Virus record (IMG/VR): IMGVR_UViG_3300032236_002285
Span: 1-64,000 of that record
Reading direction: 5' to 3' (one strand)
Length of the DNA stretch: 64,000 nucleotides
This document shows positions 36,322-64,000 of the stretch, piece after piece. The first letter of the stretch is position 1. Each line of letters opens with the position of its first letter. A program made the position numbers and the translations under genes. The notes beneath the pieces were generated by a model that worked only from the letters and a program-made list of their open reading frames with translations, had not been told where the DNA came from and did no database searches.

Positions 36322-36382
36322 AAATAATATATTTAAGAAATCCCGTTAGAAATGACGGGATTTTTTATTTAATATATACATT

Positions 36383-36664
36383 ATGGAAAAAATGAAAAAG
36401 GTTTGTAGCAACCCCTGGTGTAAAGCACATTTCTATTACACAGAAGATGATATGGTGGAAGTTAAAAACGACCATAGAATATCTAAGATAGATAATGTTT
36501 TGAGGGAAGTTCAAAAAATTGCACCAAGTGAGTGTCCAAAGTGTAGAAGCTTTGCTACTGAACTAAGTGGTGGTGTTGAATGGAAAGATAAAGAATATGA
36601 GGGTCCAAGATTTGATGGTACTCCACATGAATTTAGATATAAAGTAACAAATTATAAATTATAA
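36383..36664 (+). CDS. Zn-ribbon protein
   Basis: CSNPWC...CPKC; AATATATA 4 nt upstream. Confidence 0.65.
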   Translation: MEKMKKVCSNPWCKAHFYYTEDDMVEVKNDHRISKIDNVLREVQKIAPSECPKCRSFATELSGGVEWKDKEYEGPRFDGTPHEFRYKVTNYKL

Positions 36665-37509
36665 TGAAATCACATTTTTTTGACTTAGATGTAATATTGA
36701 CTACTAATAGTTCTGTTTGGATTGTTGATAAAACAAAACCTAATATTCCTATTATGAAAATATCTGAATCAGATTTTAATTTGATTAAAAGAGGTATTTA
36801 TAAAAGCCAAGGAAACTCAATTAATTTTGGTGGTCATATTTACTGGATTCCAACAGAAATGTTTGAAACACTGAAGATAAAAGCAAAAAACTATAAAGCT
36901 GATATTTCAAATCTTGCTTTTTCTATGCAAGAATTCATGAATAAAGAATTAATAGAAAATTTAGAATATACTATTAATTTAGATAACATTTTACATTTAA
37001 AAAATACCAACGATGATATTTACGTTATTTGTTCTAGAAATAATAAAAGAAATTATGAGTTAATGATTTCTAAGATAGAAGATAAATTAAAAGAGAATGG
37101 ATTGGTTATAAAGAAGTTTTACTATATTTCTGAAACTTTTTATAATAGAAACTCTGACGATATATCACATAAAAAAGTAAGATTATTATTACAACATATT
37201 ATTGGTCTAAAAACAGATGGTGAAAAATTCACTGATGAGAAATTAGAACAATATGATGAGTTATTCTATTATGATGATGAAGATAGTGCTATAAAATTAG
37301 CAAAAGATTCTAACAAATTATTAACAGTTTTATTATCAAATACTGAATCAGATCTAAAAGACAATATTAAAGAAGAATTAAAATCTAAAGAACATACACT
37401 ATATGTTAATTATGCAACTGGTAATAAAGTAAATAGATTTATAATCACAAAAGTTGATATTCAATTTAGTAATTTAATAACTGTATTTGAAAGTTTTAAG
37501 TGGAGATAA
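36664..37509 (+). CDS. HAD-fold-like protein
   Basis: FFDLDV motif I-like, ICSR motif II-like, YYDD motif IV-like. Confidence 0.5.
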   Translation: MKSHFFDLDVILTTNSSVWIVDKTKPNIPIMKISESDFNLIKRGIYKSQGNSINFGGHIYWIPTEMFETLKIKAKNYKADISNLAFSMQEFMNKELIENLEYTINLDNILHLKNTNDDIYVICSRNNKRNYELMISKIEDKLKENGLVIKKFYYISETFYNRNSDDISHKKVRLLLQHIIGLKTDGEKFTDEKLEQYDELFYYDDEDSAIKLAKDSNKLLTVLLSNTESDLKDNIKEELKSKEHTLYVNYATGNKVNRFIITKVDIQFSNLITVFESFKWR

Positions 37510-38145
37510 TTATTTATCCTTATCTTTATTTATCATAGCATTCTTAATCAAATCATTCAACTTTCTATTATCCATAATAGCACCTGATGCGTCTTCACTT
37601 GCTGCTTCTTCTGATGCTGCATTTTGAGCTTTAATAACATCTGGATTTTCAATTTCGTTAAGACCTAAGTCTTTTCTCAATCCTTTATAAAACTTTTCAA
37701 GTTCGGTTCTTTGTGTAGATGAGAATTTAGAATTTTCTCTAATTTGACCAATTGTTTGATTGACAACCTCGTGCATTCTAGCAGAGTTATCACCATTATC
37801 AACTTGTCTTAATTGTGATAAGAAGTTCTTTCTTGTCATTTTTTGTAAGAAGATAGTCTCAGCATATACTTTAGCATCTTCTTTCATTTTATTTCTAATA
37901 TAAGGGTGTTCTTTTAATTGAGGTACATCACTTAAATATAAATCAATAAGTGATTCTAATACGTCCATAGACTGTTGTGTTGCAACTGTCATATCTGAGT
38001 CGTAATCATATATTTCTATCTCACCTAAATCTGGTAAATCTTCAGGTCTGGCAAGGTGTTTACTAATATCAAATTCACCACTCTCTGATTGGATTTCATC
38101 GAATTCGTCTTTGATTCTATTTCTTTCATTCTCTGTTTTTGACAT
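37510..38145 (-). CDS. gp16: Terminase small subunit (gp16-like)
   Basis: SARMHEVVNQTIGQ resembles the gp16 PRxxEV motif; divergent from the large terminase; start set at ATG 38145. Confidence 0.6.
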   Translation of the reverse strand: MSKTENERNRIKDEFDEIQSESGEFDISKHLARPEDLPDLGEIEIYDYDSDMTVATQQSMDVLESLIDLYLSDVPQLKEHPYIRNKMKEDAKVYAETIFLQKMTRKNFLSQLRQVDNGDNSARMHEVVNQTIGQIRENSKFSSTQRTELEKFYKGLRKDLGLNEIENPDVIKAQNAASEEAASEDASGAIMDNRKLNDLIKNAMINKDKDK

Positions 38146-38163
38146 AAGAAGGCGGTTTTTTAC

Positions 38164-38173
38164 AATATATATT
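38164..38173. promoter_or_regulatory. Palindromic bidirectional late promoter AATATATATT
   Basis: Only such motif in the 50-nt gap between divergent TerS and TerL. Confidence 0.6.
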
Positions 38174-38195
38174 AAAAAATATCTTTTCCTAAAAT

Positions 38196-40340
38196 ATGGC
38201 GTTTGCTCCACAACAAGAAAGACAAATGGTTTTCACAACCAAATTGGTAGATGATGCTACAGATAAGATTAATGACGGTGTTGTTGTTAAGAGATATCAA
38301 AATCCTTGGTTAAAGTCTGAAGTAGGACTTAGAAGAGCCGGTGTTACATTTAAAATGACCGCTGATGAACAATCAGAATATGTTAGGTGTGCTTTAGATG
38401 TTCATTACTTTACTGAAAAGTATTGTAAGGTTAAAACCGAAGATGGTTCTATTAATAATATAAAACTAAGAGATTATCAAGAAGAGATATTAGATAACTT
38501 TGTAAACAACAGATTTAATATTTTAATGGCATCTCGTCAGGTTGGTAAAACAATCTCATCATCTATTTTCATGTTGCATACAATTTTATTTAATAATGAT
38601 AAAAATATAATGATTGTAGCCAACAAAGGTGATACAGCAGTAGAGATTGTTGATAAGATTAAATCAATTTATTCATTATTACCTTTCTTCTTAAAACCAG
38701 GTATTAAAACTTGGAATCAAAAGTCATTAACATTTGAAAATGGTTGTAGAATTAAAACATCTGCTAGAACAAAGACTCCAGCCATCGGTTTTACCATTGA
38801 CGTACTTTATTTAGATGAGTTTGCTCATATTCCTTCAAATATTATTGAGCCTTATTATACCGCGGCTTTTCCAACTGTATCAGCCGTTCAGAATTCAAAA
38901 ATTATTATTACATCTACTCCAAATGGTATGAATTTATTTCATAGATTATTGATAGATGCGGAAAGACCTGAGGGTGATCCTTTAAAAAATAACTATAAAC
39001 CAATGAGGGTTTATTGGTATCAAGTACCTGGTCGTTTCGTTACTTATATAAGGTTAAATGCTCATAAATTGTATGAACATGGTGTCACTAAAGAAGACAT
39101 TTTTAATACTGTTAGTGATGCTTGGTCTTCTGTTACTAAGGTTGAGATGAAGTTTATCACAGATACAATGAAAGATGTCATTTATGTTTATAATAATGAT
39201 AAGTGTACTGATGAAGATGTTAGAAAAATGACATTTATTGATAGTAAAGGACACGAGGTTCCTATTTTAGCAATATCAGAAATGACAACCTGGAAAGAAG
39301 AAGCCATTAAGGACATTGGTGGTGAAGATGCGTTTAACCAAGAATATGGTTTAAGATTTATTAATGCTTCTAAGTCATTATTAAACGAAGCAATTATTGA
39401 TGAGTTATTAAGAAATAAAAAGCATTATGTTCATGAGCCTATAATGGAATTTGATAAAAGACTAAAATTTAGTTATGCCGATTTAAAATGGGTAGATGAT
39501 GATGAGGTTTTTATACCTATCATGAGAAAAGATTATAAATATGTAATATCGGTCGATATATCAGAAGGACTTGGTCAGGATTACTCTATTATAAATATAT
39601 TTAAGATATCTGAAAAACCAAGAGATTTAATAGAAATTCAAAAACCATCTTATAAGTCAATAGTTGATTTCTTTAGGTTAGAACAGATTGGTATTTATAG
39701 AAATAATTACATATCTGTCAAGCAGTTGGCTGAGTTACTTTATATGATAGTATTTGAATATTTAAACCCGGATAACTGTAAGGTGGTTGTTGAGTTAAAT
39801 AATTATGGCAACACTTTATTTGCTGAATTGCCACATGTATTTGATGGTAATAATAATTATGGTTCTTCGGTATTTGTTAGATATAAACACAGAGCAGACG
39901 CTACTGAAGAAAAGGTCGGATTAAAAGTGGGTGAGAATAAAAATCTTATGGTTAAAGATTATCAAGATTTGATGCAAAGTAAGGGTTTTGTTATTACCAA
40001 TGAAGAAAACATAAGAGAGATTACAACATTTGTTAAACACACTACATCAGCAGGTAATACTAGATATGCCGCTGACGTTGGACATGATGATACCGTAATG
40101 ACAATTGTCAATGCTACCACTGTGTTTGGTAGACATGACTTTAGTGAGATGATTGAAGAGTGGTCAAGTAAGTTTGTTGATAAGGAGTTTATGAGTTATG
40201 TTCAAGAAACATTAAAAAATATGGACTATGTAGAAGGTTTAGACTATGGTCAAGTCTTAAAAATAAGAAAACAGCAAATGAATCGATTTAAGGCTAATAA
40301 TAATGGATTTGGTACGGGTACTAATTGGTTTGGTAAATAA
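38196..40340 (+). CDS. gp17: Terminase large subunit
   Basis: LRDYQ, SRQVGKT Walker A, LYLDEFA Walker B, ITSTPNG, VDISEGLGQDYS, HDDTVM. Confidence 0.95.
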   Translation: MAFAPQQERQMVFTTKLVDDATDKINDGVVVKRYQNPWLKSEVGLRRAGVTFKMTADEQSEYVRCALDVHYFTEKYCKVKTEDGSINNIKLRDYQEEILDNFVNNRFNILMASRQVGKTISSSIFMLHTILFNNDKNIMIVANKGDTAVEIVDKIKSIYSLLPFFLKPGIKTWNQKSLTFENGCRIKTSARTKTPAIGFTIDVLYLDEFAHIPSNIIEPYYTAAFPTVSAVQNSKIIITSTPNGMNLFHRLLIDAERPEGDPLKNNYKPMRVYWYQVPGRFVTYIRLNAHKLYEHGVTKEDIFNTVSDAWSSVTKVEMKFITDTMKDVIYVYNNDKCTDEDVRKMTFIDSKGHEVPILAISEMTTWKEEAIKDIGGEDAFNQEYGLRFINASKSLLNEAIIDELLRNKKHYVHEPIMEFDKRLKFSYADLKWVDDDEVFIPIMRKDYKYVISVDISEGLGQDYSIINIFKISEKPRDLIEIQKPSYKSIVDFFRLEQIGIYRNNYISVKQLAELLYMIVFEYLNPDNCKVVVELNNYGNTLFAELPHVFDGNNNYGSSVFVRYKHRADATEEKVGLKVGENKNLMVKDYQDLMQSKGFVITNEENIREITTFVKHTTSAGNTRYAADVGHDDTVMTIVNATTVFGRHDFSEMIEEWSSKFVDKEFMSYVQETLKNMDYVEGLDYGQVLKIRKQQMNRFKANNNGFGTGTNWFGK

Positions 40341-40367
40341 AAAAAAGACACATTTCTGTGTCTTTTT
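40340..40367. terminator. Bidirectional intrinsic terminator
   Basis: AAAAGACACA-TTTC-TGTGTCTTTT. Confidence 0.75.
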
Positions 40368-40369
40368 TA

Positions 40370-40654
40370 TTAATTATTTGCTTCCATTGTCGCACTTAGT
40401 CCAGCACTTCTTAGTTTATCCTTCATTGTTGAGATTGTTTCTATATCACCATATTTAACATCACAAAATCCGTTATAGTGAACTATGTGAGCACACTGAG
40501 TTGCTTGCTCTTGCTCGTGTTTACAAACTTTCATTAAACAAGTGATAACCCAATCAAACGTATTGTGATCATCATTGTGAAGTATTAACTTATAAGGTTT
40601 TGATAAAATCTCATCTACCTTTGATTCAGTTTTCTTTTTGGTAATTGTCGCCAT
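40370..40654 (-). CDS. clpS: ATP-dependent Clp protease adaptor ClpS
   Basis: YKLILHNDDHNTFDWVI...AHIVHYNG. Confidence 0.85.
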   Translation of the reverse strand: MATITKKKTESKVDEILSKPYKLILHNDDHNTFDWVITCLMKVCKHEQEQATQCAHIVHYNGFCDVKYGDIETISTMKDKLRSAGLSATMEANN

Positions 40655-40660
40655 AATTTA

Positions 40661-41191
40661 TTATATATTATTTGAGAAAATAGTTTCTTTTTTGTTAACA
40701 ACATCAACTACTGTAACTTTCACATGATGTTCTTCAGCCCATTCTTCAAACTTAATTAAATGTTCATGTCTATCGTCAAAAAGTATAAACTCATGGACTC
40801 CTAGTTCTTCAATCTTTTCTTCAAATAGTTTAGTTTTGAAGTTATATGTATCACCACCCCAGTTTAAATGTACTTCATCAAATGATAGATTATGTTGGTT
40901 TAGAATACTCATAACATTTTCAAGCATTCCTGTTTTTTTTCTAAGACGACCTGTTGCCAAAATAACATAGTTATCTGGATCTGATACGGCTTCTAAGTAT
41001 TTTTTATAAACCCATTGATTTAATGGTACATAAAATATTTCAGGGTCTATACTTTCTGGTCTACCCCACCAACCACCAAACGGCCAATCAGTTCCAGTTT
41101 TTTCTTTCCAAATTTTTTGACCTTCTTCAGGCTTTGGGGTGTGACAAATTGTATCGTCAAAGTCAAATGATATCAGCCTTTTATAACTCAT
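40661..41191 (-). CDS. HAD phosphatase (RNA-repair 'Swiss army knife'-like)
   Basis: SFDFDDT, WWGRPES, LATGR, FDDRHEH. Confidence 0.7.
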   Translation of the reverse strand: MSYKRLISFDFDDTICHTPKPEEGQKIWKEKTGTDWPFGGWWGRPESIDPEIFYVPLNQWVYKKYLEAVSDPDNYVILATGRLRKKTGMLENVMSILNQHNLSFDEVHLNWGGDTYNFKTKLFEEKIEELGVHEFILFDDRHEHLIKFEEWAEEHHVKVTVVDVVNKKETIFSNNI

Positions 41192-41292
41192 TATTGTAGT
41201 TTATTTTTAAATATTTACAAATATATATAAAATTTTTGAAAATTAAAAGGGTAAATTGAAAAATAATATATATTGCAAAAATAATAAGTTTT

Positions 41293-42847: not shown

Positions 42848-42964
42848 TTAATAAAATATTAAAAGAATTAAAACCCATCAAATATTTGATGGGTTTTTTA
42901 TTTAATAAAATTACCATCAATGTGATTATCAATTTTTAATATATATAATAAAAATAAGTTATTT

Positions 42965-43654
42965 ATGAAAGTTTGTTGTTCATGTAAACAGGTAAAAACA
43001 CTTGATTCATTTGGTAAATTAAAATCAAGTAAAGATGGCTATAGACATAATTGTAAAGATTGTAGAAAAATATACTCTATAGATAATAAAGATAAAATTA
43101 AAGAATATAGAAAAGGTTATTATTTATCAAATAAAGAAAAGTGTAATTATAAAAGTAAGCAGTGGTACATAGAAAATATAGAATTCAAAAAAGAATATGA
43201 CAAAGAATATGCTTTAGTAAATAAAGATAAAAGAAGTGAAACTTATAAGAAGTGGAGAAATGATAATATTGATAAAATAAGAGAATATAAAAAAAATTAT
43301 TATCATAATGTTACTACAAAAGATCCTGATAAACTAATTAAAGTTTCTGCTAGGTCTTTAGTTAAGAGATTTATGAAGGTTAAAAATCACAAAACAAATG
43401 AGATAATTGGGTGTTCTTATGAGTATCTAAGATTTTATTTAGAATCTAAATTTGAAAAATGGATGACTTGGGATAATTATGGTTTATATAATGGTGAATT
43501 AAATCATGGGTGGGATATTGATCACATAATACCACTATCGTCTGCTAAAACAGACGAAGAATTAATTAGATTAAATCACTATACTAACTTACAACCTCTT
43601 TGTAGTAAAGTGAATAGAGATATTAAAAATGATAAAATTGATTTTTATATATAG
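42965..43654 (+). mobile_element. HNH-type homing endonuclease
   Basis: N-terminal CxxC...CKDC; WDNYG...WDIDHIIPL...HYTNLQPL. Confidence 0.75.
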
Positions 43655-43657
43655 TTA

Positions 43658-44272
43658 ATGGCTTATATTAAAAAATTTGAGAGTTTTCAAAGTCAATCTA
43701 TATTGGTTATAGTTGATGTTCAGAAAAGCTTTCGTAAGTTTTTTTCAGAAATGTATCTGAATGAATTAAAGAAGTATTGTAAACAATTTGATATTGTTTA
43801 TCAAATTTTTGATAATCACATAGATGGTAAGAATGTGGATAAAGATTATTTATATGATGATGAGCCGATTATTCCTATTCATAAAGATCTTTATCATTTC
43901 CCTAATCAAAAAGAACTTATTGAAAAAAGATACAATTATAAAGTAGATGCTGACTTTTATAAGAAAATTCTAGATAAAGAAGTATATAATGATATTTCTG
44001 ATAAAGAAGATAAGAAATTATTAAAGAAAGGTGATATATTTCCTACTAAAGAATATACATACATAGTTTATATTGGTAATAACCATCAGTGGTATCACTG
44101 CCCTAAGAAGTTATATGAGTTATTAACATCATTAAAAGATAAAGAAGTTACAATAGTTGGTGGTGCTGATGGTGAATGTCTTGAAGACATTGTAACCACC
44201 GCTGAAAGTTTAGGCGTTAAAATTAAAAGAAATTACAAGTATATCTATACTGCTAGTAGTTGTCCGATTTAA
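43658..44272 (+). CDS. Cysteine hydrolase (isochorismatase/nicotinamidase-like) with CTS-like N-terminus
   Basis: ILVIVDVQKSF; VTIVGGADGECL; N-terminus MAYIKKFES. Confidence 0.6.
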   Translation: MAYIKKFESFQSQSILVIVDVQKSFRKFFSEMYLNELKKYCKQFDIVYQIFDNHIDGKNVDKDYLYDDEPIIPIHKDLYHFPNQKELIEKRYNYKVDADFYKKILDKEVYNDISDKEDKKLLKKGDIFPTKEYTYIVYIGNNHQWYHCPKKLYELLTSLKDKEVTIVGGADGECLEDIVTTAESLGVKIKRNYKYIYTASSCPI

Positions 44273-44760: not shown

Positions 44761-45845
44761 AGTGTATCTATAAATTTATATAGTTTTTTAGTATATTCTT
44801 TTCTTTTGTATTCTGCATTTGTCATACAATAAGCAACAAAAGCAAAGTACTTAACTTTCTCTATTAGTACTTCTCTTGATAGTACACCACCAGCATATCT
44901 AAACTCAACATAATTATTGGATAGTTTTGTTATATTGAAGCCAAGATTCTTAAATCCGATATCAGTAACTTTTTTACTTATGAATTGATTTAATACAACT
45001 TCAGCTTCTTTTAAATTATGTAGGTCTAAAGATTTTAGCTTTAACTTTTCTTTATCAGTTAGTTTTCTCAAATATGGTATTAAAGAACCACAAAACTTGT
45101 TATTCATTCTCCAAGTCATGTCTTTGAATGTGTAGGGTGTTGTTTCTTTTTCTGAGAAGTCATTTAACAACATTAAACCTTTAATTGGATTCCACTCTAC
45201 TGGTTGGTTTGAACCAATGTTTATGTGTATACCAGTTCTTTCTGAGAAGTACCAATAATCTTGTTTTTCTAAATCATTATAAAAGTCATTTATCATCTCA
45301 ATTGATTCTGATAAACTTGGTATGTAAGTTTTTGGTTTAATTTCAATACCTCTATCTAAAGTAGAATCACCCACAAAATCAATCTTTCTATACCATTTTC
45401 TTGTAAAGTTAGGCATATGTTGTTTAACCATCCTTTTTAGATGTGAATAATTCTCCTCGTAAATAAATGATTTAATTGAGTTTTTAAGATGATCTATTAT
45501 TTCTTTTTCTCTTTCAGTTTCGTATTTATTAATATCAAACATCTCTTCAAATGTATTTAAATCAATAGATTTATCTTCAACATGATCATATAATTTATAC
45601 ATTAAATCATAAACTAAATCTTTTTCGGATTTCTTTCTTATTCTCATGTCTTTGTAAACAATATCTATAATATCTTCTACCGCATCTTCGTCAATATCTT
45701 TAAATTTAACCTTAATATTACTTCTATCTAATGTTTCTATTTCAAACTCAAATGCCACCGTGAAGTAATCGCTGAAGCTTTCAATCATTGCGATATCTTT
45801 AGGGTTTACTTCTTCAAATAAAGAGAATTTAATTAGATGTTTCAT
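44757..45845 (-). CDS. Putative amidoligase (COOH-NH2 ligase type 2) with CTS-like N-terminus
   Basis: AFEFEIE, DSTL..GIEI, TGIHINIG, VEFRYAGG; N-terminus MKHLIKFSLFEE. Confidence 0.7.
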   Translation of the reverse strand: MKHLIKFSLFEEVNPKDIAMIESFSDYFTVAFEFEIETLDRSNIKVKFKDIDEDAVEDIIDIVYKDMRIRKKSEKDLVYDLMYKLYDHVEDKSIDLNTFEEMFDINKYETEREKEIIDHLKNSIKSFIYEENYSHLKRMVKQHMPNFTRKWYRKIDFVGDSTLDRGIEIKPKTYIPSLSESIEMINDFYNDLEKQDYWYFSERTGIHINIGSNQPVEWNPIKGLMLLNDFSEKETTPYTFKDMTWRMNNKFCGSLIPYLRKLTDKEKLKLKSLDLHNLKEAEVVLNQFISKKVTDIGFKNLGFNITKLSNNYVEFRYAGGVLSREVLIEKVKYFAFVAYCMTNAEYKRKEYTKKLYKFIDTL

Positions 45846-45893
45846 ATTGTCTATATATATAAAATTAATATATACTAAAAATTAATGTGAATT

Positions 45894-46370: not shown

Positions 46371-46743
46371 ATGTTATAACTGCATATACATTATAGTCTG
46401 CTATTTGAAATAGTATCTCCATATATTCCTGATATCTTTCGGGGTCTTCATAAAAGTTAACTTGTAATTGATAAGATATTGAATCTAATTCAGGTATATA
46501 ATTTTTTACTTGATTTCTTAATTCCGCTTCAATTGTTTCGGCTGATAATCTTGTCTCATGTAAATATCTTGGTAAATCTCCGCCAAAATTTGGCTCACAT
46601 AATAATTCACCTCTATTGGTGAATATCATCATCTCCCATTTTTGCACGACAACTTTAACAAGATCATCTTCAATGATTTGAGAATCATTAAATCTTGGGT
46701 GTCCAGTGTATTCAATATAAAAATCTGTAAAGTCAAAAGCCAT
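46369..46743 (-). CDS. gp25: Baseplate wedge subunit / sheath initiator
   Basis: FTNRGELLCEPNFGGDLPRYLHE...YIPEL. Confidence 0.8.
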   Translation of the reverse strand: MAFDFTDFYIEYTGHPRFNDSQIIEDDLVKVVVQKWEMMIFTNRGELLCEPNFGGDLPRYLHETRLSAETIEAELRNQVKNYIPELDSISYQLQVNFYEDPERYQEYMEILFQIADYNVYAVIT

Positions 46744-46775
46744 AACATATATATTAATATATTATGGCTCTTTTG

Positions 46776-47738: not shown

Positions 47739-47788
47739 ATTAGGTATATAAATTATTAAGAGAAAGTTTATATTTAATATATACTCGT

Positions 47789-48736
47789 ATGATAGGTGAA
47801 AGATTTAATTTTGAAGATGTATTTTTTAGAGATTTAACCGTTTGTGTTTTAGATACTTTAGAGGGACAAGTTAAATGGATCAACAGGTTTTCATCTGGTG
47901 ATGTTTTTGTTGAGGTTCCCTTTTATTATTCACTTACGGGTGACGAGAGATTTCTATTAGATTCATTTGCGGATGATATAGTATCAGAAAACAGATTTGT
48001 TGAGTTAAATACAGATATGATTCCAAGAGGTCATTTAACAATGACTGGTTTTAATATCAAGTCTGATGAATTTGCTAACCCAAATGTTTGGCTAAGAATG
48101 GTTGTTGAGAATGAAGTAGAGATTAGAAAAATAATAGCTAAAGTTAGAGCTGTTCCAATTACCGTAAACTATGATTTAGAAATATTACTAAACTCTGAAA
48201 TTGACACATTCAAGTGTTCTCAGGCTATTATGGATACTCTTTGGTTATATAAGTTTATGTACTTTGAGTATAACTTCATGAATATAGATGCTGTTATTTT
48301 AATGCCTGATTCAAATCAAATTGAAATGTCAAGAGAGAAAAATCTAACATCAGATAATAGTATTAAATTAAAAGTTTCTTTTACGGTTGATACTTATTAT
48401 CCAGCTTTTAGAAGTGATAGAGTTAATGGTACTGGTTACCCTCAACAATATGGTTCAGGTATGAAAGATAGTAATGGTTTTGCATTTTCTGGTGGATATT
48501 CAGAGTATTTTGACCAACCTAAGCAAGCAACACCTTATGGTGCTACTACTAGTTTTTATAATACGCAATCAGCTTCACCAAATAGTGCTTATGGTCAGTT
48601 TGCTAACTCTGATTATATGATAATATCACCTAAAAGAACTAGATGGTTTAACAACATCTTAAAAGCAAGAGAAAAGGCAACCGGTAATATAATTAACCCT
48701 AATGGTAAGGATCCAGGTGGTCCTCCAAATCATTAA
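47789..48736 (+). CDS. gp15: Tail terminator / sheath stabiliser
   Basis: VPFYYS, IPRGHL, AVPITVNYDLEI pattern; late promoter 5 nt upstream. Confidence 0.7.
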   Translation: MIGERFNFEDVFFRDLTVCVLDTLEGQVKWINRFSSGDVFVEVPFYYSLTGDERFLLDSFADDIVSENRFVELNTDMIPRGHLTMTGFNIKSDEFANPNVWLRMVVENEVEIRKIIAKVRAVPITVNYDLEILLNSEIDTFKCSQAIMDTLWLYKFMYFEYNFMNIDAVILMPDSNQIEMSREKNLTSDNSIKLKVSFTVDTYYPAFRSDRVNGTGYPQQYGSGMKDSNGFAFSGGYSEYFDQPKQATPYGATTSFYNTQSASPNSAYGQFANSDYMIISPKRTRWFNNILKAREKATGNIINPNGKDPGGPPNH

Positions 48737-53130: not shown

Positions 53131-53144
53131 TTTTATATATAAAA
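53131..53144. promoter_or_regulatory. 14-bp palindrome TTTTATATATAAAA, putative bidirectional late promoter
   Basis: Lies in the 44-nt gap between divergent gp4 and gp2. Confidence 0.55.
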
Positions 53145-54361: not shown

Positions 54362-54434
54362 CACCTAATCTGGTTCTGACTTTAGAGGAAGGTTAGAAAT
54401 TTAATATATAAACGAAATAGTTATTTTAAAATAA

Positions 54435-56162
54435 ATGGCATCTTATAATCAATTTCAAGCCGGCTCAGGTCAATCAAATTTCACTTATACAAATAGTGCT
54501 GTTGAAAATAAAGGACTTTTTAGTAGAATTTTAAGAAGTTTGTCATCATACGGTATGAACTATGATGATATGATTGTTAGAAACCAAGTTGGTATTGGTA
54601 TCAACGAAGATCCATTTGCTGCTAGAGGAAACTCAATGTATGATTTCTTTTCACAAAGAGCAGTGGCTTCTGTTTTAAACAGAAAATCAATTCCTTATTT
54701 AGATAAAGCATACGCTGATAAAAGAAGAATTCTAAGAGAATATTCAATTAAAGATGAAATCAGAGATTTCGTTAGTTCTATTACAGATGAAAGTATTGTT
54801 TATAATGATGAAAGAGATTTTTGCTCACCTGCTGCTTTAGGTAATGACTATTCTCAAGAAATTAAAGATAAATACCAAGAATATTTTGAAAAAATTTATA
54901 ATAAATATGGCTTTGGTGATAACATCACAGCTTGGAATATGATGAGAGATTTCTTAATTGATGGTTATCTAGCATTGGAAGTTATTTATGATGATAAGAA
55001 AAAGAATATTATTGGTTTTAATAGATTAAGACCTGAAACATTAGTTCCCGCATTTGAACCAACAATTGGTCACTTGTGGATCCAGTTTCCAGAAGATCCT
55101 CAATTAAGAAGAATCTTCTTAGACTCTCAAATTGTTTATATCTCATATTCAACTCAAAATGATTATTCAGAAACATCTTATGTAGAGGGTTTAATTAAAC
55201 CTTATAACCAATTAAAGATTCTTGAACAAACAAGAGTAATGTTTAACATTATTAATGCTACGGTTTATCAAAAGTTTACTATTCCTATTAAGGGTTTATC
55301 AAGACAAAGAGCCGAAGAACAAATCGGTCAATTGATTAATGACTATTCGGAAGAAGTTGAATGGGATGATTCATTAGGTACATTAACTATTAATGGTGCT
55401 AAACACTTACCTTATAATAAACAAATTTGGTTCCCTGAAGGAGATGCTGGTACTCCAGCTATGGAATTGGTTTCACCTGAAGGACATAATTTGAATGAGT
55501 CAGATATGTTGACTTGGTTCTACAATGCTCTAAAAAGAGCTTCTAAAATTCCTTTCCAACGTTTTGATAAAGAAAATGGTGGTGGTAACTTAATCAATGA
55601 CTCATCAGATATGACAAGAGATGAGATTAAATTTTATAACTTTATTAATAGATTAAGAGCTAACTTCAAAGAGATTATCGTTAAGCCGTTAAAACTTCAA
55701 ATGTTAATTGAGTTTCCTGAATTAAAAGAAGATGAGGTTCTTATGAACCAAATTGATATTATCTTTAACTCAAATCAAGTATTTGAAGAATGGAAAAAAT
55801 TAAATAATTTGGCTAAGAAAGCTGAAATATTTGGTACTTTAGTTGGTATTATGAATGGTGAAAAACCTTACTTCCATATTGAGTATTTAATTGATAACGT
55901 ATTCAAATTAACTCCAGAAGAAAAAGCAGAAAACCAAAAATATTGGGCTAAAGATGCCGCTGGTGCTCCTGGTGGAGGCGGTGGTGCTGGTGCTCCAGGT
56001 GGTGAAGGCGGTGGTGAAGGCGTTGTTCCTGGTGAAGGCGGTGAAGCCGGTGGTGGTGAGGCTCCTGAAGCTGGTGGTGCTCAAGCTGCTCCTGAAGCTC
56101 AGGCGGCTCCTGAAAATCCTCCTCCAGCCGAAGGTGGTGGTGAAACCGAATTTGAATTCTAA
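54435..56162 (+). CDS. gp20: Portal protein
   Basis: FLIDG, KPYNQLKILE, AEEQIGQLINDY, ASKIPFQRF, MTRDEIKFYNFINRLR; Gly/Glu/Ala-rich tail. Confidence 0.92.
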   Translation: MASYNQFQAGSGQSNFTYTNSAVENKGLFSRILRSLSSYGMNYDDMIVRNQVGIGINEDPFAARGNSMYDFFSQRAVASVLNRKSIPYLDKAYADKRRILREYSIKDEIRDFVSSITDESIVYNDERDFCSPAALGNDYSQEIKDKYQEYFEKIYNKYGFGDNITAWNMMRDFLIDGYLALEVIYDDKKKNIIGFNRLRPETLVPAFEPTIGHLWIQFPEDPQLRRIFLDSQIVYISYSTQNDYSETSYVEGLIKPYNQLKILEQTRVMFNIINATVYQKFTIPIKGLSRQRAEEQIGQLINDYSEEVEWDDSLGTLTINGAKHLPYNKQIWFPEGDAGTPAMELVSPEGHNLNESDMLTWFYNALKRASKIPFQRFDKENGGGNLINDSSDMTRDEIKFYNFINRLRANFKEIIVKPLKLQMLIEFPELKEDEVLMNQIDIIFNSNQVFEEWKKLNNLAKKAEIFGTLVGIMNGEKPYFHIEYLIDNVFKLTPEEKAENQKYWAKDAAGAPGGGGGAGAPGGEGGGEGVVPGEGGEAGGGEAPEAGGAQAAPEAQAAPENPPPAEGGGETEFEF

Positions 56163-56173
56163 AACATATTATA

Positions 56174-58536: not shown

Positions 58537-58551
58537 ATATGAGTATTCTAT

Positions 58552-58947: not shown

Positions 58948-59058
58948 AAAAAACCGCTCAATTTCTTTTATTTATTAAATTTTATTCCTTTCCTCTTGAA
59001 TCTATCTATAAATAATCCTAACTTTTATAAATATGGTTTTCCTTTTAATAAATAGTGT

Positions 59059-59691
59059 ATGGCTTTTAAAAGAAAATGTACTAATTGTTTTTTTATTGGA
59101 ATGGATGATCAATACTTTACAAATAATAAAAAAATTTGTAATACTTGTTTTGATTTAAAATCTGAAGTTAAAATAAAGAAAAAATTAGAATCAAAAATAA
59201 AAAAGAGTGAGTATCTAAAATCTTGGCGATTAAAAAATAAAGAATATCTGAAAAAATATTCAGATAAGTGGATAAGTGAGAATCCTGAGAAAGTTAAAAA
59301 GTACTCAAAAAAAGCGTATTTAAAGAACAAAGAGTCTATAAATGAATATCAAAAATTTTATGTAAAAAAAAGAAGATTGAGTGATCCACTATTTAAATTG
59401 AAAACCAATCTAAGAAATCTAATAAAGAATAGTTTACAAAAACAAGGTTATACTAAAAAATCTAAAACCTATGATATAGTTGGGATATCTTATGATGAAT
59501 TTAGAGAGTATATAGAGAGTCAGTTTACAGATGGTATGTGTTGGGATAATTATGGAGAATGGCACTTAGATCATATAATTCCTATATGTTCTGCTGACTC
59601 TGAATCATCAGCTATTGATTTATGTTATTATAAAAATTTTCAACCATTATGGGCGGTTGATAATCAAACTAAAAGTGGTAAAATTTTATAG
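59059..59691 (+). mobile_element. HNH-type homing endonuclease
   Basis: CTNC...CNTC; DPLFKLK; WDNYGEWHLDHIIP...NFQPLWA..N. Confidence 0.75.
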
Positions 59692-59696
59692 GTTGG

Positions 59697-59745
59697 AACG
59701 TCTAAAATGTTGATTTTTATTTAAAAAATCAACATTTTAGACGTT
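59697..59745. repeat. Perfect 22-bp inverted repeat (hairpin)
   Basis: AACGTCTAAAATGTTGATTTTT-ATTTA-AAAAATCAACATTTTAGACGTT. Confidence 0.9.
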
Positions 59746-59875
59746 TTATTTTTACACACTCTTGAAACAAAATGCCCTGATAGATTACACTCGGTCTGTA
59801 AATAATCCACCTTTGATTTTTTTGAATAAATAAGGTCTTATATATACTCTATATTTTAAAAAATAATAAACTTAA

Positions 59876-62038
59876 ATGAAACCAGTATTAATTATAGAAA
59901 ATTCAACAAACTCTCTTATTAGAGAGAATAATGGTTCACAAAAGAAGGATTATATTTTAGGTGGTACATTCACAGAATTTGGTGTTAAAAACCGTAATGA
60001 AAGAATTTACACTGCTGAGAAATTTCTTCCAGCGTTACAAGAACTAAATGAAAGAATGAGCAGCTTAGGTGTTGTTTATGGTGAGTTTGATCATCCAGAT
60101 GTTTTCGATACATCTCTTTCTAGAGCATCACACATCATTACAAAAGCTAATTATGTTAAAGAGTCAAATCTTGTTAGTGGTGAAATCAGATTATTAAATA
60201 CTTATTGGGGTAGAGAAGCTAAGGCATTGGTCGATGACGGATGTCCTGTTTTTGTTTCTTCAAGAGCAGCTGGTATCACTGAATCAGATGGTACTGTTTC
60301 GTTAAAAAAATTATTCACTTATGATATCGTTGCTGATCCGGGTTTTGCTTCAGCTAAAATGTCTATCAAGACGCTTAATGAATCATTAGGATATAATGAA
60401 AACTCTAACTTTAGGATATATGAAATGTCCGATGAGTCCAAAATAAATCAACTATTTGATATGAACAAAAATGAATTTGTTACAAAGCAACAGTTAACTG
60501 AATATTCTCAGTATTTAGTTAAGGAATTAGCTTCTACTAAAAAAGAAGTTAAAGGTGCTCTTACTAAAGGTAACTTATCTCCAAAGAAAATGGAGCAACT
60601 TTTAGAGTACTATGAAGAGTTAAATTCAACAAATGCTCAAGTTGTTAAATATCTAGATTATTTGGCTGAAAAAGTACAAGTTATGGTTAATGAGAACAAG
60701 TCGTTAAAAGAAACAACTGACAAACTTATTAAGCACAATGACTATTTAGCTGAAAATTTAGAGAAAGCTGTTAACTACTCTGAATATTTAGCTGAAAACT
60801 TAGACAAAAATATTGAGTATTCTGAATACTTAGCTGAGAACTTAGATAAGAACATTTCTTACTCTGAATACATTGCTGAAAACTTAGATAAGAACATTTC
60901 TTACTCTGAATATTTAGCTGAAAACTTAGACAAAAATATCGAATACTCTGAATACTTAGCAGAAAATCTTGATAAGAATATTGCTTATTCAGAATATATC
61001 GCTGAAAACTTAGACAAAAATATTGCATACGCTGAATACATTGCTGAGCACGTTGATAATTCAATTGCTTACTCTGAATACTTAGCAGAACATGTTGAAG
61101 GTAACATTGCTTACTCTGAATACATTGCTGAACATTTAGATGATAACATTGCTTATTCAGAATATATTGCTGAAAATCTTGACAAATCAATTTCATATCA
61201 AGGTTTAATCGTTGAAAAGTTAAATTCTAAAAAATTAAACGAATCAATGAATGAAGAAGATGAGGAAGCTTTCCCATCATTACATGATGCTGGTTTTGAA
61301 GATGCTCACGAAGAAGAAGGTCATGAAGATGCTCACGAAGATGACGAAGAAGATTGTGGTCCAATGGGTCATGAAGAAGAAGGTCATGAAGAAGAAGCTC
61401 ACGAAGACGTTCACGAAAATAAAGAAGAAGATGACGAAGAAGATTGCGGTCCAATGAGTCATGAAGAAGAAGGACATGAAGATGAAGAAGAAGAAAACTG
61501 GGAAGTTAAAGGTAACAGCGATTCTGAATTATCTGAGTCAATAAATAAATTAATTGAAGAAGCTAAAAAACGTAAAGTTTCTGAAAATAGTGATTTGAAT
61601 TTCTTAAAATTCTTAAACAAATCACAAGTAGATAGTTTCTATGCTTTGTCTGATGAAGACCAAGAGGCTGTTAAATTTCACATAAGCGAAAGAAATTACT
61701 TCACATCTAAAGATGTGTTAAGCCTAATCGCAGAAGCACTATCATCTAAGAATGAATCTCTTGAAGAAAGAGTTATCAGATTAATGCCTGAAAACACTAA
61801 GGCTATCTGGAGTCAAATGAATGAATCTGCTAAAAAATCTATCTTATCACAAGCTAGACTTTACCCAGCTGAAGTTTTAATGACTGAATCACAAATTGAA
61901 CATTTCTGGTTAACTAGAAATTTCAAGAAAAACGAATCTGTAACTAAAAAGTTAGTAGCTCATGAAAGTTTAATACAAGAAGATAAACTTTCTGATAATG
62001 ACGTTACTGCGATTATGGAAAGATTCAAAAACATCTAA
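59876..62038 (+). CDS. gp21: Prohead protease fused to scaffold/core protein (gp21+gp22-like)
   Basis: KNRNERIY, GEFDHP, ASHII, VSSRAAG, YDIVADPGF, followed by coiled-coil repeats and an acidic tract; directly upstream of the MCP. Confidence 0.9.
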   Translation: MKPVLIIENSTNSLIRENNGSQKKDYILGGTFTEFGVKNRNERIYTAEKFLPALQELNERMSSLGVVYGEFDHPDVFDTSLSRASHIITKANYVKESNLVSGEIRLLNTYWGREAKALVDDGCPVFVSSRAAGITESDGTVSLKKLFTYDIVADPGFASAKMSIKTLNESLGYNENSNFRIYEMSDESKINQLFDMNKNEFVTKQQLTEYSQYLVKELASTKKEVKGALTKGNLSPKKMEQLLEYYEELNSTNAQVVKYLDYLAEKVQVMVNENKSLKETTDKLIKHNDYLAENLEKAVNYSEYLAENLDKNIEYSEYLAENLDKNISYSEYIAENLDKNISYSEYLAENLDKNIEYSEYLAENLDKNIAYSEYIAENLDKNIAYAEYIAEHVDNSIAYSEYLAEHVEGNIAYSEYIAEHLDDNIAYSEYIAENLDKSISYQGLIVEKLNSKKLNESMNEEDEEAFPSLHDAGFEDAHEEEGHEDAHEDDEEDCGPMGHEEEGHEEEAHEDVHENKEEDDEEDCGPMSHEEEGHEDEEEENWEVKGNSDSELSESINKLIEEAKKRKVSENSDLNFLKFLNKSQVDSFYALSDEDQEAVKFHISERNYFTSKDVLSLIAEALSSKNESLEERVIRLMPENTKAIWSQMNESAKKSILSQARLYPAEVLMTESQIEHFWLTRNFKKNESVTKKLVAHESLIQEDKLSDNDVTAIMERFKNI
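60733..61200 (+). repeat. Coding tandem repeat, 42 nt / 14 aa (YSEY[LI]AENLDKNI[AES]), 10 full copies plus degenerate flanks
   Basis: Read directly in the translation of 59876..62038. Confidence 0.95.
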
Positions 62039-62114
62039 TCTATAAAAAATCCACACTTACGAAAATCAAGTAAATAAAGGGTTATATATAGATCATAAAA
62101 AAAAATAAAAAATT

Positions 62115-63809
62115 ATGTCACACATTAGAATAGACAAAACAAAAGCAGTTAAGAAATGGGCTCCTGTATTGGAGAACATGGGCGTTGCTGCTGATAGAGT
62201 TGAATGGATGTCAGAAATGGCTGAGTATCACTCAATCAATGAAAACGCATATGTAAATGCTTCTAACGTAGCAGGTATGGGTAGTGTATTGAATCCAGTT
62301 GTTGGTTCATTAGCTGGTAACCCAGGTAACTACACAAATGCTTACGGTAACGTAGCAGGTTCTGGCGACGTAGGTCAAAACTTACTTCCAGTAGCTATGA
62401 AAATCGCGGGTCAAACTATCGGTTTAGACTTAGTAGCTGTTAAACCAACTCCTGGTCCAAAAATCGATTTGTTATATATCGACTTCCAATATGACGATAT
62501 TAACACATCATCAAATGAAAGACCACAAGTTTTCAAATTGACTTGTGATAACGTAGCAGCTATCGAAGCAGCTATTACTTCTGATCTTTCTGGTTATTCA
62601 ATTAATCAAAGTCAAGGTGGTTTACAAGGTGGTAGAGTATTCTACGGTATTACTGCATCTAGCGTTTATAAAACAACAACTGAACCAGGTACTAAAACAA
62701 ACATCGTTGAGTTCTTAGGTTTCTCTCGTGTTGATGGTTTACCAATGTTCAGAGCTTACAGACAAAATAACTCTACAGCAGTAGGTGCTTATAATAACAC
62801 TTTTGACGCAACTAAAAACACTTTTGACCAAACTAGTCCAATAGTTTCTCAAATTTTAAGTATCTCTGGTGTAACTCCAACAGCTAACTCTAATAAAGCA
62901 GTTCAATTAGTATCTGCTCTTGAAGATCATCTTCCTGGTTTCTCTGCAAACTGGACATCTTCTACAGGTGCTGCTTCTGGTAACTACCCAATGGGTCGTC
63001 AAGCAGATGATGACAGCTATGCTGGTGTTATCGGTCCAAAAATTTCTTCTAAAACTGTTGCAGTTGGTACTATTGAAGTATCTTCAGCTCTTAGAAGAAC
63101 TGAAATTGAAGATATCAAAGCTAATACAGGTATGGATATCGTTCAAAAAATGGAATCAATCCTTGTTAACGAACTTTCTCAAACAATCTCTAAACAAATT
63201 GTTGCTAAAGTATTCGAAATGGGTGATTTGAACAGAACAGGCGCTCCTGCTTCTTCTGCAACTGCTAACCCTAACTCACTTTCAGGTTGGACAATTTTTG
63301 ACTTGGATACTGCATACGCATCTAACCAAGTTGGTGGTGAAACAACTCACGCTGTTCAACGTAAGTTGATCACTAAGATTGCTCACGCTTCTAACTATAT
63401 CGCAACTGAAGGTCGTGTTGGTCCTGCTCAATACCTTATCACAAACGGAGGTCTTGCTGCCGCTTTACAAGATATCGCTGGTTATACAATTAACCCAGTT
63501 AAATCTAAATTAAACGGTCAAGGTCAACTTTATCCAGTTGGTTCAATCGGAGATATCTCTATCTATGTAGATCCATATCAAAGATACAACGATAATAGAA
63601 TCGTTCTTGGTAGAAAAAACAACCCAGATCAACCAGGTATCATTTTCGTACCTTACTTGATGGCTCAGTCTATCTCAGTTATCTCTGAAGCTACATTCGC
63701 TCCACGTATGTTACTTCGTTCAAGATACGCTGTAACTGAAGTTGGTTGGTACCCACACAAGCAATACATGACTATTAAAGTTAATGATGCTGCTCAATTA
63801 CTTAACTAA
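62115..63809 (+). CDS. gp23: Major capsid protein
   Basis: KKWAPVLE, QTIGLDLVAVKP, IYVDPY, GIIFVPY, TFAPRMLLRSRYA; probable processing site SINE near residue 43. Confidence 0.93.
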   Translation: MSHIRIDKTKAVKKWAPVLENMGVAADRVEWMSEMAEYHSINENAYVNASNVAGMGSVLNPVVGSLAGNPGNYTNAYGNVAGSGDVGQNLLPVAMKIAGQTIGLDLVAVKPTPGPKIDLLYIDFQYDDINTSSNERPQVFKLTCDNVAAIEAAITSDLSGYSINQSQGGLQGGRVFYGITASSVYKTTTEPGTKTNIVEFLGFSRVDGLPMFRAYRQNNSTAVGAYNNTFDATKNTFDQTSPIVSQILSISGVTPTANSNKAVQLVSALEDHLPGFSANWTSSTGAASGNYPMGRQADDDSYAGVIGPKISSKTVAVGTIEVSSALRRTEIEDIKANTGMDIVQKMESILVNELSQTISKQIVAKVFEMGDLNRTGAPASSATANPNSLSGWTIFDLDTAYASNQVGGETTHAVQRKLITKIAHASNYIATEGRVGPAQYLITNGGLAAALQDIAGYTINPVKSKLNGQGQLYPVGSIGDISIYVDPYQRYNDNRIVLGRKNNPDQPGIIFVPYLMAQSISVISEATFAPRMLLRSRYAVTEVGWYPHKQYMTIKVNDAAQLLN

Positions 63810-63829
63810 TTTGAGTTACCAAATATTGA

Positions 63830-63855
63830 AAAAAGACCCTTTATGGGTCTTTTTT
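63830..63855 (+). terminator. Intrinsic terminator after the MCP gene
   Basis: AAAAGACCC-TTTAT-GGGTCTTTT. Confidence 0.8.
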
Positions 63856-63889
63856 CTTTTTAAACAATTTTGAATTTAATATATACTTT

Positions 63890-64000
63890 ATGAAAAAATA
63901 CTTACTTATTGAGGTAAATTCTGATGATGATATCATTGTTAAGTACTTTGATGATTTAACTGATGTACATTCTTATGTTTGTCATGAGTTAATGTACGAG
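63890..64000 (+). CDS. Partial hypothetical protein running off the window
   Basis: ATG 4 nt after AATATATA (63878-63885); open to the end of the window. Confidence 0.5.
   Translation, partial: MKKYLLIEVNSDDDIIVKYFDDLTDVHSYVCHELMYE

What the first reader, a model, noticed from the sequence alone, without database searches (positions are those of the whole stretch)
36371..63892. Late promoters 4-6 nt from the start codon imply leaderless mRNAs
Seen: the octamer-to-ATG gap is 5 nt (6126), 4 (25299), 4 (36383), 4 (43658), 6 (45845), 4 (46743), 5 (47789), 4 (59059) and 4 (63890). Abundant proteins (MCP, sheath, tube, portal) instead have ~20-30 nt A-rich leaders. Known: T4 late transcripts start about 5-6 nt after the octamer. 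Inference: many late mRNAs start at or next to the AUG, so leader length may set protein stoichiometry in two tiers.
Basis: partly seen in the sequence, partly recalled or inferred. Interest (0 to 1): 0.6.

Follow-up and report, generated by a model that had tools for sequence, protein, structure and literature searches.

The report
Promoters butted against start codons
In this 476-kb phage of a Flavobacterium-like host, about one gene in seven has a promoter ending just 4-7 bases before its ATG, so its mRNA should have essentially no leader; this is a conserved, clade-wide habit in a host phylum where such mRNAs are rare, but no RNA data could be obtained to prove it.

Summary
All nine sites check out, and a tenth lies at 40662. 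The octamer is not T4's TATAAATA but (TTT)AATATATA or TATATATA.

Across the whole 476-kb genome, the distance from octamer to ATG has two peaks: 4-7 nt (73 genes) and about 16-30 nt (89 genes). Almost nothing falls at 8-16 nt and nothing below 3. In the long-gap class, the 5th base after the octamer is A in 83% of cases and opens an A-run. That marks the likely transcription start, which is the A of ATG in the gap-4 genes.

A second promoter class, the Bacteroidota sigma-A type (TTG...TAnnTTTG), shows the same spike at exactly 4 nt (21 genes). For that class, published mapping places the start 4-5 nt after the element.

The pattern is kept in related phages with terminase identity down to 65%. 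In orthologues the spacer letters vary but the spacer length does not.

Not supported:
- The "late, T4-like" label. The motif also precedes ribonucleotide reductase, bS21 and ClpS, and no gp55 homologue was found.
- The two-tier stoichiometry idea, which has only weak support.

No RNA evidence was obtainable. I read these as probable leaderless mRNAs, with confidence about 0.7.

The parts
6113..6128 (+). AATATATA + 5 nt + ATG of a 254-aa protein (phrog_36119, unknown function)
25297..25311 (-). Variant octamer AATAAATA + 4 nt + ATG of a 111-aa HNH-endonuclease-like protein
36334..36385 (+). Terminator hairpin (36334-36367) whose T-tail runs into TTTAATATATA (octamer 36371-36378), then 4 nt, then ATG of a 93-aa protein
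   Evidence: arrangement kept in orthologues down to 36% identity
40652..40669 (-). AATATATA + 7 nt + ATG of ClpS (94 aa). The gap changes between 4, 7, 11 and 24-26 nt among relatives.
43646..43660 (+). TATATATA + 4 nt + ATG of a 204-aa protein. The octamer lies in the last codons of the upstream gene, and the stop TAG overlaps its end.
45843..45861 (-). TATATATA + 6 nt (8 in the other register) + ATG of a 362-aa protein
46741..46755 (-). AATATATA + 4 nt + ATG of a gp25-like baseplate wedge protein (124 aa)
47776..47791 (+). AATATATA + 5 nt + ATG of a 315-aa protein (weak match to gp15 sheath stabiliser)
59047..59061 (+). Variant octamer AATAAATA + 4 nt + ATG of a 210-aa endonuclease-VII-like protein
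63878..63892 (+). AATATATA + 4 nt + ATG of a 228-aa protein that runs past the window end
38164..38173 (.). 10-bp palindrome AATATATATT serving as a two-way promoter. On the + strand it gives a 24-nt gap to large terminase (38196-40340). On the - strand it gives a 20-nt gap to a 211-aa gene (37510-38145).
54403..54437 (+). Leadered promoter of the portal gene (gap 24)
62083..62117 (+). Leadered promoter of the major capsid gene (gap 24)
59839..59878 (+). Leadered promoter of the prohead protease gene (gap 29)
31291..31331 (-). Leadered promoter of the tail sheath gene (gap 30)
34871..34905 (+). Host-type (Bacteroidota sigma-A) -7 element TATATTTG, 24-nt gap to a 155-aa gene. This is the window's example of the second promoter class.

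Best explanation
TTTAATATATA is the phage's own single-element, -10-type promoter, with no -35 element. RNA polymerase most likely starts at the 5th base after the octamer, occasionally the 6th.

Genes then fall into two discrete designs:
- **Leaderless design.** The ATG is placed exactly at the start site, 4-7 nt after the octamer. This gives an mRNA with a leader of 0-3 nt, presumably translated by direct 70S binding to the 5'-terminal AUG.
- **Leadered design.** The mRNA begins with AAA and carries a minimal A-rich leader of about 15-22 nt without a Shine-Dalgarno sequence, as is usual in Bacteroidota.

Leaders of about 4-12 nt would suit neither initiation route, and they are avoided.

The same two designs are used with the host sigma-A promoters (TTG...TAnnTTTG), which presumably drive early genes.

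Shown here: the sequence statistics, the geometry and the conservation. Inferred: the start site, the mode of translation, and which polymerase factor reads the motif.
For: 1. **Two peaks, with or without gene calls.** For AATATATA, gene starts fall at gap 4 (31), 5 (17), 6 (7) and 7 (4), and about 60 fall at gaps 19-26. Almost none fall at 8-16, and only two below 4 (gaps -1 and 1). The few gap-3 cases come from TATATATA.
2. **One promoter, two designs.** Both classes share TTT + octamer and lack a -35 element. In the long-gap class the 5th base after the octamer is A in 83% of cases, followed by more A, with T favoured at the 4th base. Relative G001 shows the same (36 of 43 A).
3. **Host-type promoters behave the same way.** For TAT[AC]TTTG, 21 sites have an ORF-opening ATG at gap exactly 4, against 0-5 at any other offset. 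In Flavobacterium the -7 element occupies -12 to -5, with 4 or 5 nt to the mapped start (PMC6847099; PMC9723704). That places +1 on the A of ATG.
4. **Few alternative sources of a leader.** 39 of 73 short-gap genes head divergent gene pairs, and 61 of 73 have no other promoter-like octamer within 150 nt upstream. 11 of 73 have a terminator hairpin directly abutting the promoter, against 3% at random positions.
5. **Conservation.** Two peaks are seen in every terminase-identity band from 65% to 100%, in all of G001 and in LR745206.1. In orthologues the spacer letters vary while the octamer and the 4-6 nt length persist. Between G000 and G002, 30 of 36 short-gap genes stay short and 37 of 46 long-gap genes stay long.
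6. **Not a paralogue artefact.** The 73 short-gap genes belong to 68 distinct families.
7. **Start codon.** It is ATG in 72 of 73 short-gap genes.
8. **Bacteroidota-type translation.** Shine-Dalgarno-like words are nearly absent upstream, and the closest bacterial bS21 homologues are from Flavobacterium.
Against:
- The closest characterised single-element phage promoter, phiEco32 tAATGTAtA, starts 6-8 nt downstream (PMC8948821). That geometry would cut off a gap-4 ATG.
- 34 of 73 short-gap genes follow a gene on the same strand, so read-through could also give leadered copies of their mRNAs.
- The factor that reads the motif is unidentified. The only sigma found is an ECF type with region 4, which would be expected to need a -35 element.
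- Gaps of 6-7 nt imply leaders of 1-3 nt rather than strictly none.
Confidence: 0.7

Rival explanations
1. The octamer is a promoter, but transcription starts 6-8 nt downstream, as for phiEco32 gp36. The gap-4 and gap-5 ATGs would then be missing from those transcripts. These genes would be translated from read-through mRNAs, and the close spacing would only reflect gene packing.
For: phiEco32 single-element promoters start 6-8 nt after tAATGTAtA. 34 of 73 short-gap genes have an upstream gene on the same strand, with a median spacer of 21 nt.
Against: - Packing does not predict a tenfold ATG spike at exactly gap 4 with a hard edge below it.
- It does not predict the same spike after host -7 elements, whose start distance is known to be 4-5 nt.
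- 39 of 73 short-gap genes head divergent pairs, and 61 of 73 have no other promoter-like site upstream.
- Some promoters directly follow terminators.
Confidence: 0.1
2. In the short-gap genes the AU-rich octamer is a translation signal: an unstructured ribosome landing site at -12 to -5, where a Shine-Dalgarno sequence would sit. It would not be a promoter there.
For: The 4-7 nt spacing resembles Shine-Dalgarno-to-AUG spacing. Bacteroidota favour A-rich, unstructured initiation regions (PMC6847099).
Against: - The identical TTT + octamer occurs 19-26 nt upstream of another 89 genes.
- It sits at the head of divergent units and forms two-way palindromes.
- An undisputed promoter element, TAnnTTTG, shows the same 4-nt spike.
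- No spread of spacings is seen, as a landing site would allow.
Confidence: 0.07
3. The start codons are mis-called. The real starts lie downstream, and the ATG next to the octamer is incidental.
For: My gene calls simply take the first ATG of each open frame. Most short-gap proteins have no known family.
Against: - The enrichment holds without gene calls.
- Orthologues at 36-60% identity begin at the same ATG with the same geometry.
- With a 4-nt gap the frame reads AAT ATA TAN, and N is A or G in 48% of the short-gap class as a whole. An in-frame stop therefore often sits 6 nt upstream of the ATG.
Confidence: 0.05

Closest known systems
T4 late promoters (TATAAATA, gp55/gp33/gp45)
   Same: A single AT-rich 8-bp element of -10 type with no -35 element, placed a few bases before the start, in front of virion genes.
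   Different: - The octamer differs: AATATATA here, and TATAAATA is not enriched.
- No gp55 or gp45 homologue was found by single-sequence search.
- The motif also precedes non-late functions.
- T4 late mRNAs are leadered and use Shine-Dalgarno sequences (own knowledge).
Bacteroidota sigma-A promoters (-33 TTTG / -7 TAnnTTTG)
   Same: The phage's second promoter class matches this consensus, including an upstream TTG. The phage-specific octamer occupies the same -12 to -5 register with the same 4-nt distance to the inferred start.
   Different: In the hosts, leaderless mRNAs are a small minority: 3.7% of 5' UTRs under 10 nt in B. thetaiotaomicron and 5.5% in F. psychrophilum. Here about 45% of promoter-proximal genes have the leaderless layout. 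TAHHTTTG-N4-ATG is about four times denser per Mb in the phage than in two Flavobacterium genomes, where it barely exceeds the control pattern.
phiEco32 gp36 sigma promoters (tAATGTAtA)
   Same: A phage-specific single-element promoter with no -35 element, and nearly the same letters (TAATATATA against TAATGTATA).
   Different: The start is reported 6-8 nt downstream there. gp36 lacks region 4, whereas the only sigma found here has it. No leaderless layout is described for phiEco32.
Leaderless mRNAs (lambda cI from PRM; many genes of Actinobacteria, Deinococcus, archaea and their viruses)
   Same: A promoter element directly precedes an AUG that is the 5' end of the mRNA, and an AUG start codon is required (own knowledge; PMC4633059 is cited within).
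   Different: Here it is a genome-wide, two-peak design in a huge phage of a phylum that rarely uses it. In the jumbo phages that have been studied, none was seen: phiKZ showed no leaderless transcript, and AR9 5' UTRs are 26-491 nt.
Virion-RNAP early promoters of phiKZ-like jumbo phages (AR9: AAATATATATTAT-N6-G)
   Same: An extended AT-rich single element with a fixed short distance to the start.
   Different: No multisubunit RNAP was detected here by Pfam models, by a search for the DFDGD motif, or by PHROG scans of the large proteins. The distance is 6 nt to a G there, against 4 nt to an A here.

Membership tests
T4-type late transcription system | Promoter octamer TATAAATA centred near -10 | tested here: not met
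   TATAAATA has 21 hits in the window against 17 expected. Genome-wide it has 154 hits with no spike before gene starts. The enriched octamer is AATATATA.
T4-type late transcription system | No -35 element | tested here: met
   Information content is about 0 from -72 to -17 relative to the inferred start.
T4-type late transcription system | gp55 sigma and gp45 clamp co-activator encoded | tested here: inconclusive
   T4 gp55 and gp45 used as single queries find nothing in the genome. Such searches are insensitive. A clamp loader is present.
Leaderless mRNA | Transcript 5' end at, or within about 3 nt of, the AUG | not testable with these tools
The feature is inferred from geometry only.
Leaderless mRNA | AUG (not GUG or UUG) start codon | tested here: met
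   72 of 73 short-gap genes start with ATG. This is weak evidence, because 95% of all genes do.
Leaderless mRNA | No alternative upstream promoter or read-through that would supply a leader | tested here: inconclusive
   61 of 73 have no other promoter-like octamer within 150 nt, 39 of 73 head divergent pairs, and 11 of 73 follow a terminator. However, 34 of 73 have an upstream gene on the same strand.
Bacteroidota sigma-A promoter (second class) | -7 element TAnnTTTG, with no G at the two n positions | tested here: met
   TAT[AC]TTTG is enriched about ninefold upstream of genes.
Bacteroidota sigma-A promoter (second class) | -33 TTTG about 19-21 nt upstream | tested here: inconclusive
   TTG lies 17-25 nt upstream at 67 of 209 sites, and at 11 of 23 gap-4/5 sites. 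The -33 element is also weak in F. johnsoniae.
phiEco32 gp36-type single-element promoter | Sigma lacking region 4, matching a promoter without a -35 element | tested here: not met
   The only sigma detected has regions 2 and 4_2 and resembles ECF sigmas such as SigW and SigE.
phiKZ/AR9-type phage multisubunit RNAP | Split beta/beta' homologues encoded | tested here: inconclusive
   There are no Pfam Rpb1_2 or Rpb2_6 matches, no DFDGD motif, and no PHROG RNAP hit among proteins of 700 aa or more. Five proteins of 1351-1943 aa have no PHROG match, and a sixth (1715 aa) has only a negligible one.

The most novel reading that the evidence does not exclude
A widespread clade of huge freshwater phages of Flavobacteriia runs two parallel translation channels. 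In this genome, about half of its own transcription units are leaderless and about half carry a minimal leader. The phage would exploit this split, for example through its own bS21 or other changes to the ribosome, to favour or time its own protein synthesis in a host whose mRNAs are almost all leadered.
Probability: 0.15. Interest if true: 0.8.

Novelty: new variant of a known kind. Interest (0 to 1): 0.62.

Why it matters
- **Scale and setting.** If the starts map where the geometry predicts, this is the first large-scale use of leaderless mRNAs found in a huge phage. About 15% of all genes and 45% of promoter-proximal genes have this layout, in a phylum that translates without Shine-Dalgarno sequences and where leaderless mRNAs are rare.
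- **A natural experiment.** The empty zone between 8 and 16 nt shows which leader lengths Bacteroidota ribosomes cannot use.
- **Practical use.** It supplies a compact 11-bp promoter and an exact start-codon rule. These could improve gene calling in roughly 170 related metagenomic phage contigs.
- **A testable link.** It suggests a connection to phage-encoded ribosomal protein bS21.
- **Prior work.** I found no earlier description in the searched literature.

Tried and rejected
- **T4 analogy.** TATAAATA is not enriched. T4 gp55 and gp45 queries found nothing.
- **Phage RNA polymerase.** Pfam beta and beta' models, a DFDGD motif search, and PHROG scans of 18 proteins of 700-1943 aa gave no polymerase.
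- **The one sigma found.** It is an ordinary ECF type with region 4. I do not assign the octamer to it.
- **E. coli-type promoters.** They are not enriched: 98 found against 94 expected.
- **Paralogue expansion as the cause.** Rejected, because the 73 genes belong to 68 families.
- **Tests of the two-tier abundance idea.**
  - Protein length: not significant (p = 0.057).
  - Overall NNC codon bias: not significant (p = 0.21).
  - Top-40 codon-biased genes: 5 long-gap against 0 short-gap (p = 0.06).
  - A, S or P as second residue: p = 0.006.
- **Tube protein.** Not confirmed by Pfam, PHROGs or PDB sequence search. The only evidence is a language-model match.
- **Circular closure of the contig.** Joining the contig ends does not restore the truncated fibre gene, and there is no terminal repeat.
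Full report
**What the window is.** The window is the first 64 kb of a single 476,236-bp contig with 29.9% G+C. IMG/VR holds it as a virus record, about 97% complete. Under the standard bacterial code, a simple longest-ORF caller gives 636 genes covering 94% of the sequence.

The window carries a myovirus-type virion module:
- large terminase, 38196-40340;
- portal, 54435-56162;
- prohead protease, 59876-62038;
- major capsid protein, 62115-63809;
- tail sheath, 27403-31293 on the minus strand;
- head closure protein;
- gp25-like wedge protein.

The only relative in the phage database is LR745206.1, an uncultured 634,780-bp phage. IMG/VR, however, holds 168 contigs with a terminase 65-89% identical.

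**The host is almost certainly a member of the Bacteroidota, probably Flavobacteriia.** Four lines point there:
- The phage uses the phylum-specific promoter TTG-N(19-21)-TAnnTTTG.
- Shine-Dalgarno-like words are nearly absent upstream of genes.
- Its bS21 gene is closest to those of Flavobacterium species, at 59% identity.
- Several large proteins carry N-terminal signal-peptide-like sequences of the kind I associate with Bacteroidota secreted proteins (own reading).

**Checking the observation.** The octamer, however, is AATATATA or TATATATA, usually preceded by TTT. T4's TATAAATA is not enriched and has no positional relation to genes. Two of the nine sites (25299 and 59059) carry the variant AATAAATA, which shows no genome-wide spike and is therefore weaker evidence. 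One further site was missed: ClpS at 40654, gap 7.

**The genome-wide picture.**
- AATATATA is the most enriched 8-mer upstream of genes. Of 181 copies, 134 lie within 50 nt of a start in the sense orientation.
- The gap to the start codon has two sharp peaks: 4 nt (31), 5 (17), 6 (7) and 7 (4), against about 60 at 19-26 nt. There is nearly nothing at 8-16 nt, and only two sites below 4 (gaps -1 and 1).
- The pattern does not depend on my gene calls. ATG stands at gap 4 in 33 of 181 sites against 3.2 expected (p = 3e-23).
- Counting both octamer forms once per gene gives 73 short-gap and 89 long-gap genes. A later classifier with slightly wider limits counts 91 long-gap genes.
- The 73 short-gap genes fall into 68 unrelated families, so duplication does not explain them.

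**Where transcription should start.**
- The two classes share the same upstream T-run and octamer, and neither has a -35 element.
- In the long-gap class, the 5th base after the octamer is A in 83% of cases. It opens an A-rich run, and T is favoured at the 4th base. This is the usual pyrimidine(-1)/purine(+1) signature of a start site.
- In gap-4 genes, that same position is the A of ATG.
- The hard lower edge at 4 nt fits this reading: an ATG any closer would be cut off the transcript.
- Read as TAATAT + 7 nt, the geometry is the canonical distance from a sigma-70-family -10 hexamer to the start (own knowledge).

**An internal control with known geometry.** The phage's host-type promoters, TAT[AC]TTTG, show the same behaviour. 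21 sites have an ORF-opening ATG at a gap of exactly 4, against 0-5 at every other offset. For this element the start distance has been measured. In F. johnsoniae it occupies -12 to -5, with 4 or 5 nt to the start (PMC6847099). F. psychrophilum gives the same register (PMC9723704). For these genes the A of ATG is therefore predicted to be +1.

**Could a leader come from elsewhere?**
- 39 of 73 short-gap genes head a divergent gene pair.
- 61 of 73 have no other promoter-like octamer within 150 nt upstream.
- 11 of 73 have a terminator hairpin plus T-run directly abutting the octamer, against 3% of random positions. An example is 36334-36367, whose T-tail runs into the promoter of the gene at 36383.
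- On the other side, 34 of 73 follow a gene on the same strand. Read-through versions of their mRNAs cannot be excluded.

**Conservation.**
- The two peaks appear in all terminase-identity bands.
- They appear in the whole 204-kb contig G001, whose terminase is 67% identical. There the counts are 16, 10, 2 and 1 at gaps 4-7, an empty zone from 9 to 17 apart from a single site at gap 13, and 29 at gaps 18-27. The 5th base after the octamer is A in 36 of 43 leadered promoters.
- They appear in 45 kb of LR745206.1.
- In orthologues of five window genes, the spacer letters change freely while the octamer and a 4-6 nt spacer persist, down to 36-60% protein identity.
- Among reciprocal best hits with the 385-kb relative G002, 30 of 36 short-gap genes stay short and 37 of 46 long-gap genes stay long. 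Only 8 switch class, and promoter type almost never changes.
- When genes do switch (ClpS, and the gene at 47789), most land in one mode or the other, though one ClpS lineage sits at an intermediate gap of 11 nt.

**How unusual this is.**
- Short 5' UTRs are a small minority in Bacteroidota. UTRs under 10 nt make up 3.7% in B. thetaiotaomicron and 5.5% in F. psychrophilum, and 87% of F. johnsoniae leaders exceed 10 nt.
- In this phage, 96 of 636 genes (15%) have the butt-joined layout. That is 45% of the 213 genes with a recognised promoter.
- TAHHTTTG-N4-ATG occurs 30 times in 0.48 Mb of phage. Two 3.5-3.7 Mb Flavobacterium genomes have 50 and 64 copies, where the reversed control pattern gives 36 and 51.
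- The jumbo phages studied by TSS mapping show nothing similar. phiKZ has no leaderless transcripts, and AR9 5' UTRs are 26-491 nt.
- Searches for leaderless mRNAs in huge, jumbo or crAss-like phages, or for this motif, found no prior description. The paper on bS21-encoding lake phages did not analyse promoters.

- The system is not demonstrably T4-like. The octamer is different, no gp55 or gp45 homologue was found by single-sequence search, and no phage RNA polymerase was detected.
- The only sigma found is an ordinary ECF type with region 4, at genome 209428-210216. It is a poor fit for a promoter without a -35 element, so the recognition factor is unknown.
- The nearest precedent in letters is the phiEco32 gp36 element tAATGTAtA. 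Its start lies 6-8 nt downstream, which is the main reason for caution here.
- The motif is not restricted to late genes. It precedes the ribonucleotide reductase large subunit (gap 24), bS21 (gap 23) and ClpS.

**The two-tier stoichiometry idea is only weakly supported.**
- For it: MCP, sheath, portal and protease are leadered. None of the 40 most NNC-biased genes is in the short-gap class, against 5 in the long-gap class (p = 0.06). A, S or P as second residue is commoner in the long-gap class (26 of 89 against 8 of 73, p = 0.006).
- Against it: terminase and reductase are also leadered. Overall codon bias and protein length do not differ between the classes. Orthologues occasionally switch class.

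**Verdict.** The leaderless interpretation is the best explanation, at about 0.7, but it rests on geometry, statistics and conservation rather than on RNA.

Noticed in passing
window 1-2679 (+): An 892-aa open frame is cut by the contig start. It has collagen triple-helix repeats plus a C-terminal Peptidase_S74 chaperone domain, which indicates a tail fibre. It explains the 39% G+C at the window start. Joining the contig ends does not restore the gene, and there is no terminal repeat.
   Followed up: partly
window 38164-38173; 53134-53141; 45852-45874: Palindromic cores (AATATATATT, TATATATA) serve divergent genes on both strands, making very compact two-way promoters.
   Followed up: partly
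window 36334-36378; also 42870-42907, 40341-40368: Strong intrinsic-terminator hairpins occur in 35-50 kb (14 against 3.5 expected). The T-tail of the one at 36334-36367 runs directly into the T-rich upstream part of the next promoter, and the tail of the 42870-42897 hairpin reads similarly. The hairpin at 40341-40368 is two-way and sits between terminase and ClpS.
   Followed up: partly
window 40370-40654 (-); genome 284643-286775: The phage encodes a ClpS adaptor (Pfam E = 2e-19) and a 710-aa ATP-dependent protease (phrog_4871, E = 3e-249), suggesting that it interferes with host proteolysis.
   Followed up: no
genome 171225-171413 (L094:1483-1671): A phage bS21 ribosomal protein gene sits under an AATATATA promoter (gap 23). 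Its closest bacterial homologues are from Flavobacterium spp. (59% identity). Unlike the published bS21 phages, it lies far from the terminase/capsid block.
   Followed up: partly
genome 209428-210216 (L001:1237-2025): A single ECF-type sigma factor (regions 2 and 4_2, about 75-aa N-terminal extension) lies inside an operon with no promoter motif of its own. Its target promoters are unknown.
   Followed up: partly
window 24964-25299 (-), 42965-43654, 59059-59691; genome 302270, 304985, 354419: An HNH gene and a five-member family of endonuclease-VII-like zinc-finger proteins are scattered through the genome, and at least four of the six have a promoter of their own. These may be homing endonucleases. 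The two short-gap sites with the variant octamer AATAAATA belong to this group.
   Followed up: no
window 15200-21031 (-), 10519-13503, 31915-34797 (-); genome 141762, 156343, 175858, 198045, 424424: Eight proteins of 960-1943 aa, most of them under leadered AATATATA promoters. Seven have no PHROG match, and the 1715-aa one has only a negligible hit (phrog_17264, E = 1e-4). Pfam was run only on the three in the window and found nothing. A divergent polymerase or virion protein could be among them.
   Followed up: partly
window 3845-6025 (-): A 726-aa protein fuses a group-1 glycosyltransferase domain with a family-9 (heptosyltransferase-like) domain.
   Followed up: no
leadered genes genome-wide: Aligned on the ATG, leadered promoter genes show an 80-85% A block at -17 to -15. 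This is the inferred 5' end of the mRNA, so the leader length itself looks constrained to about 16-20 nt.
   Followed up: partly
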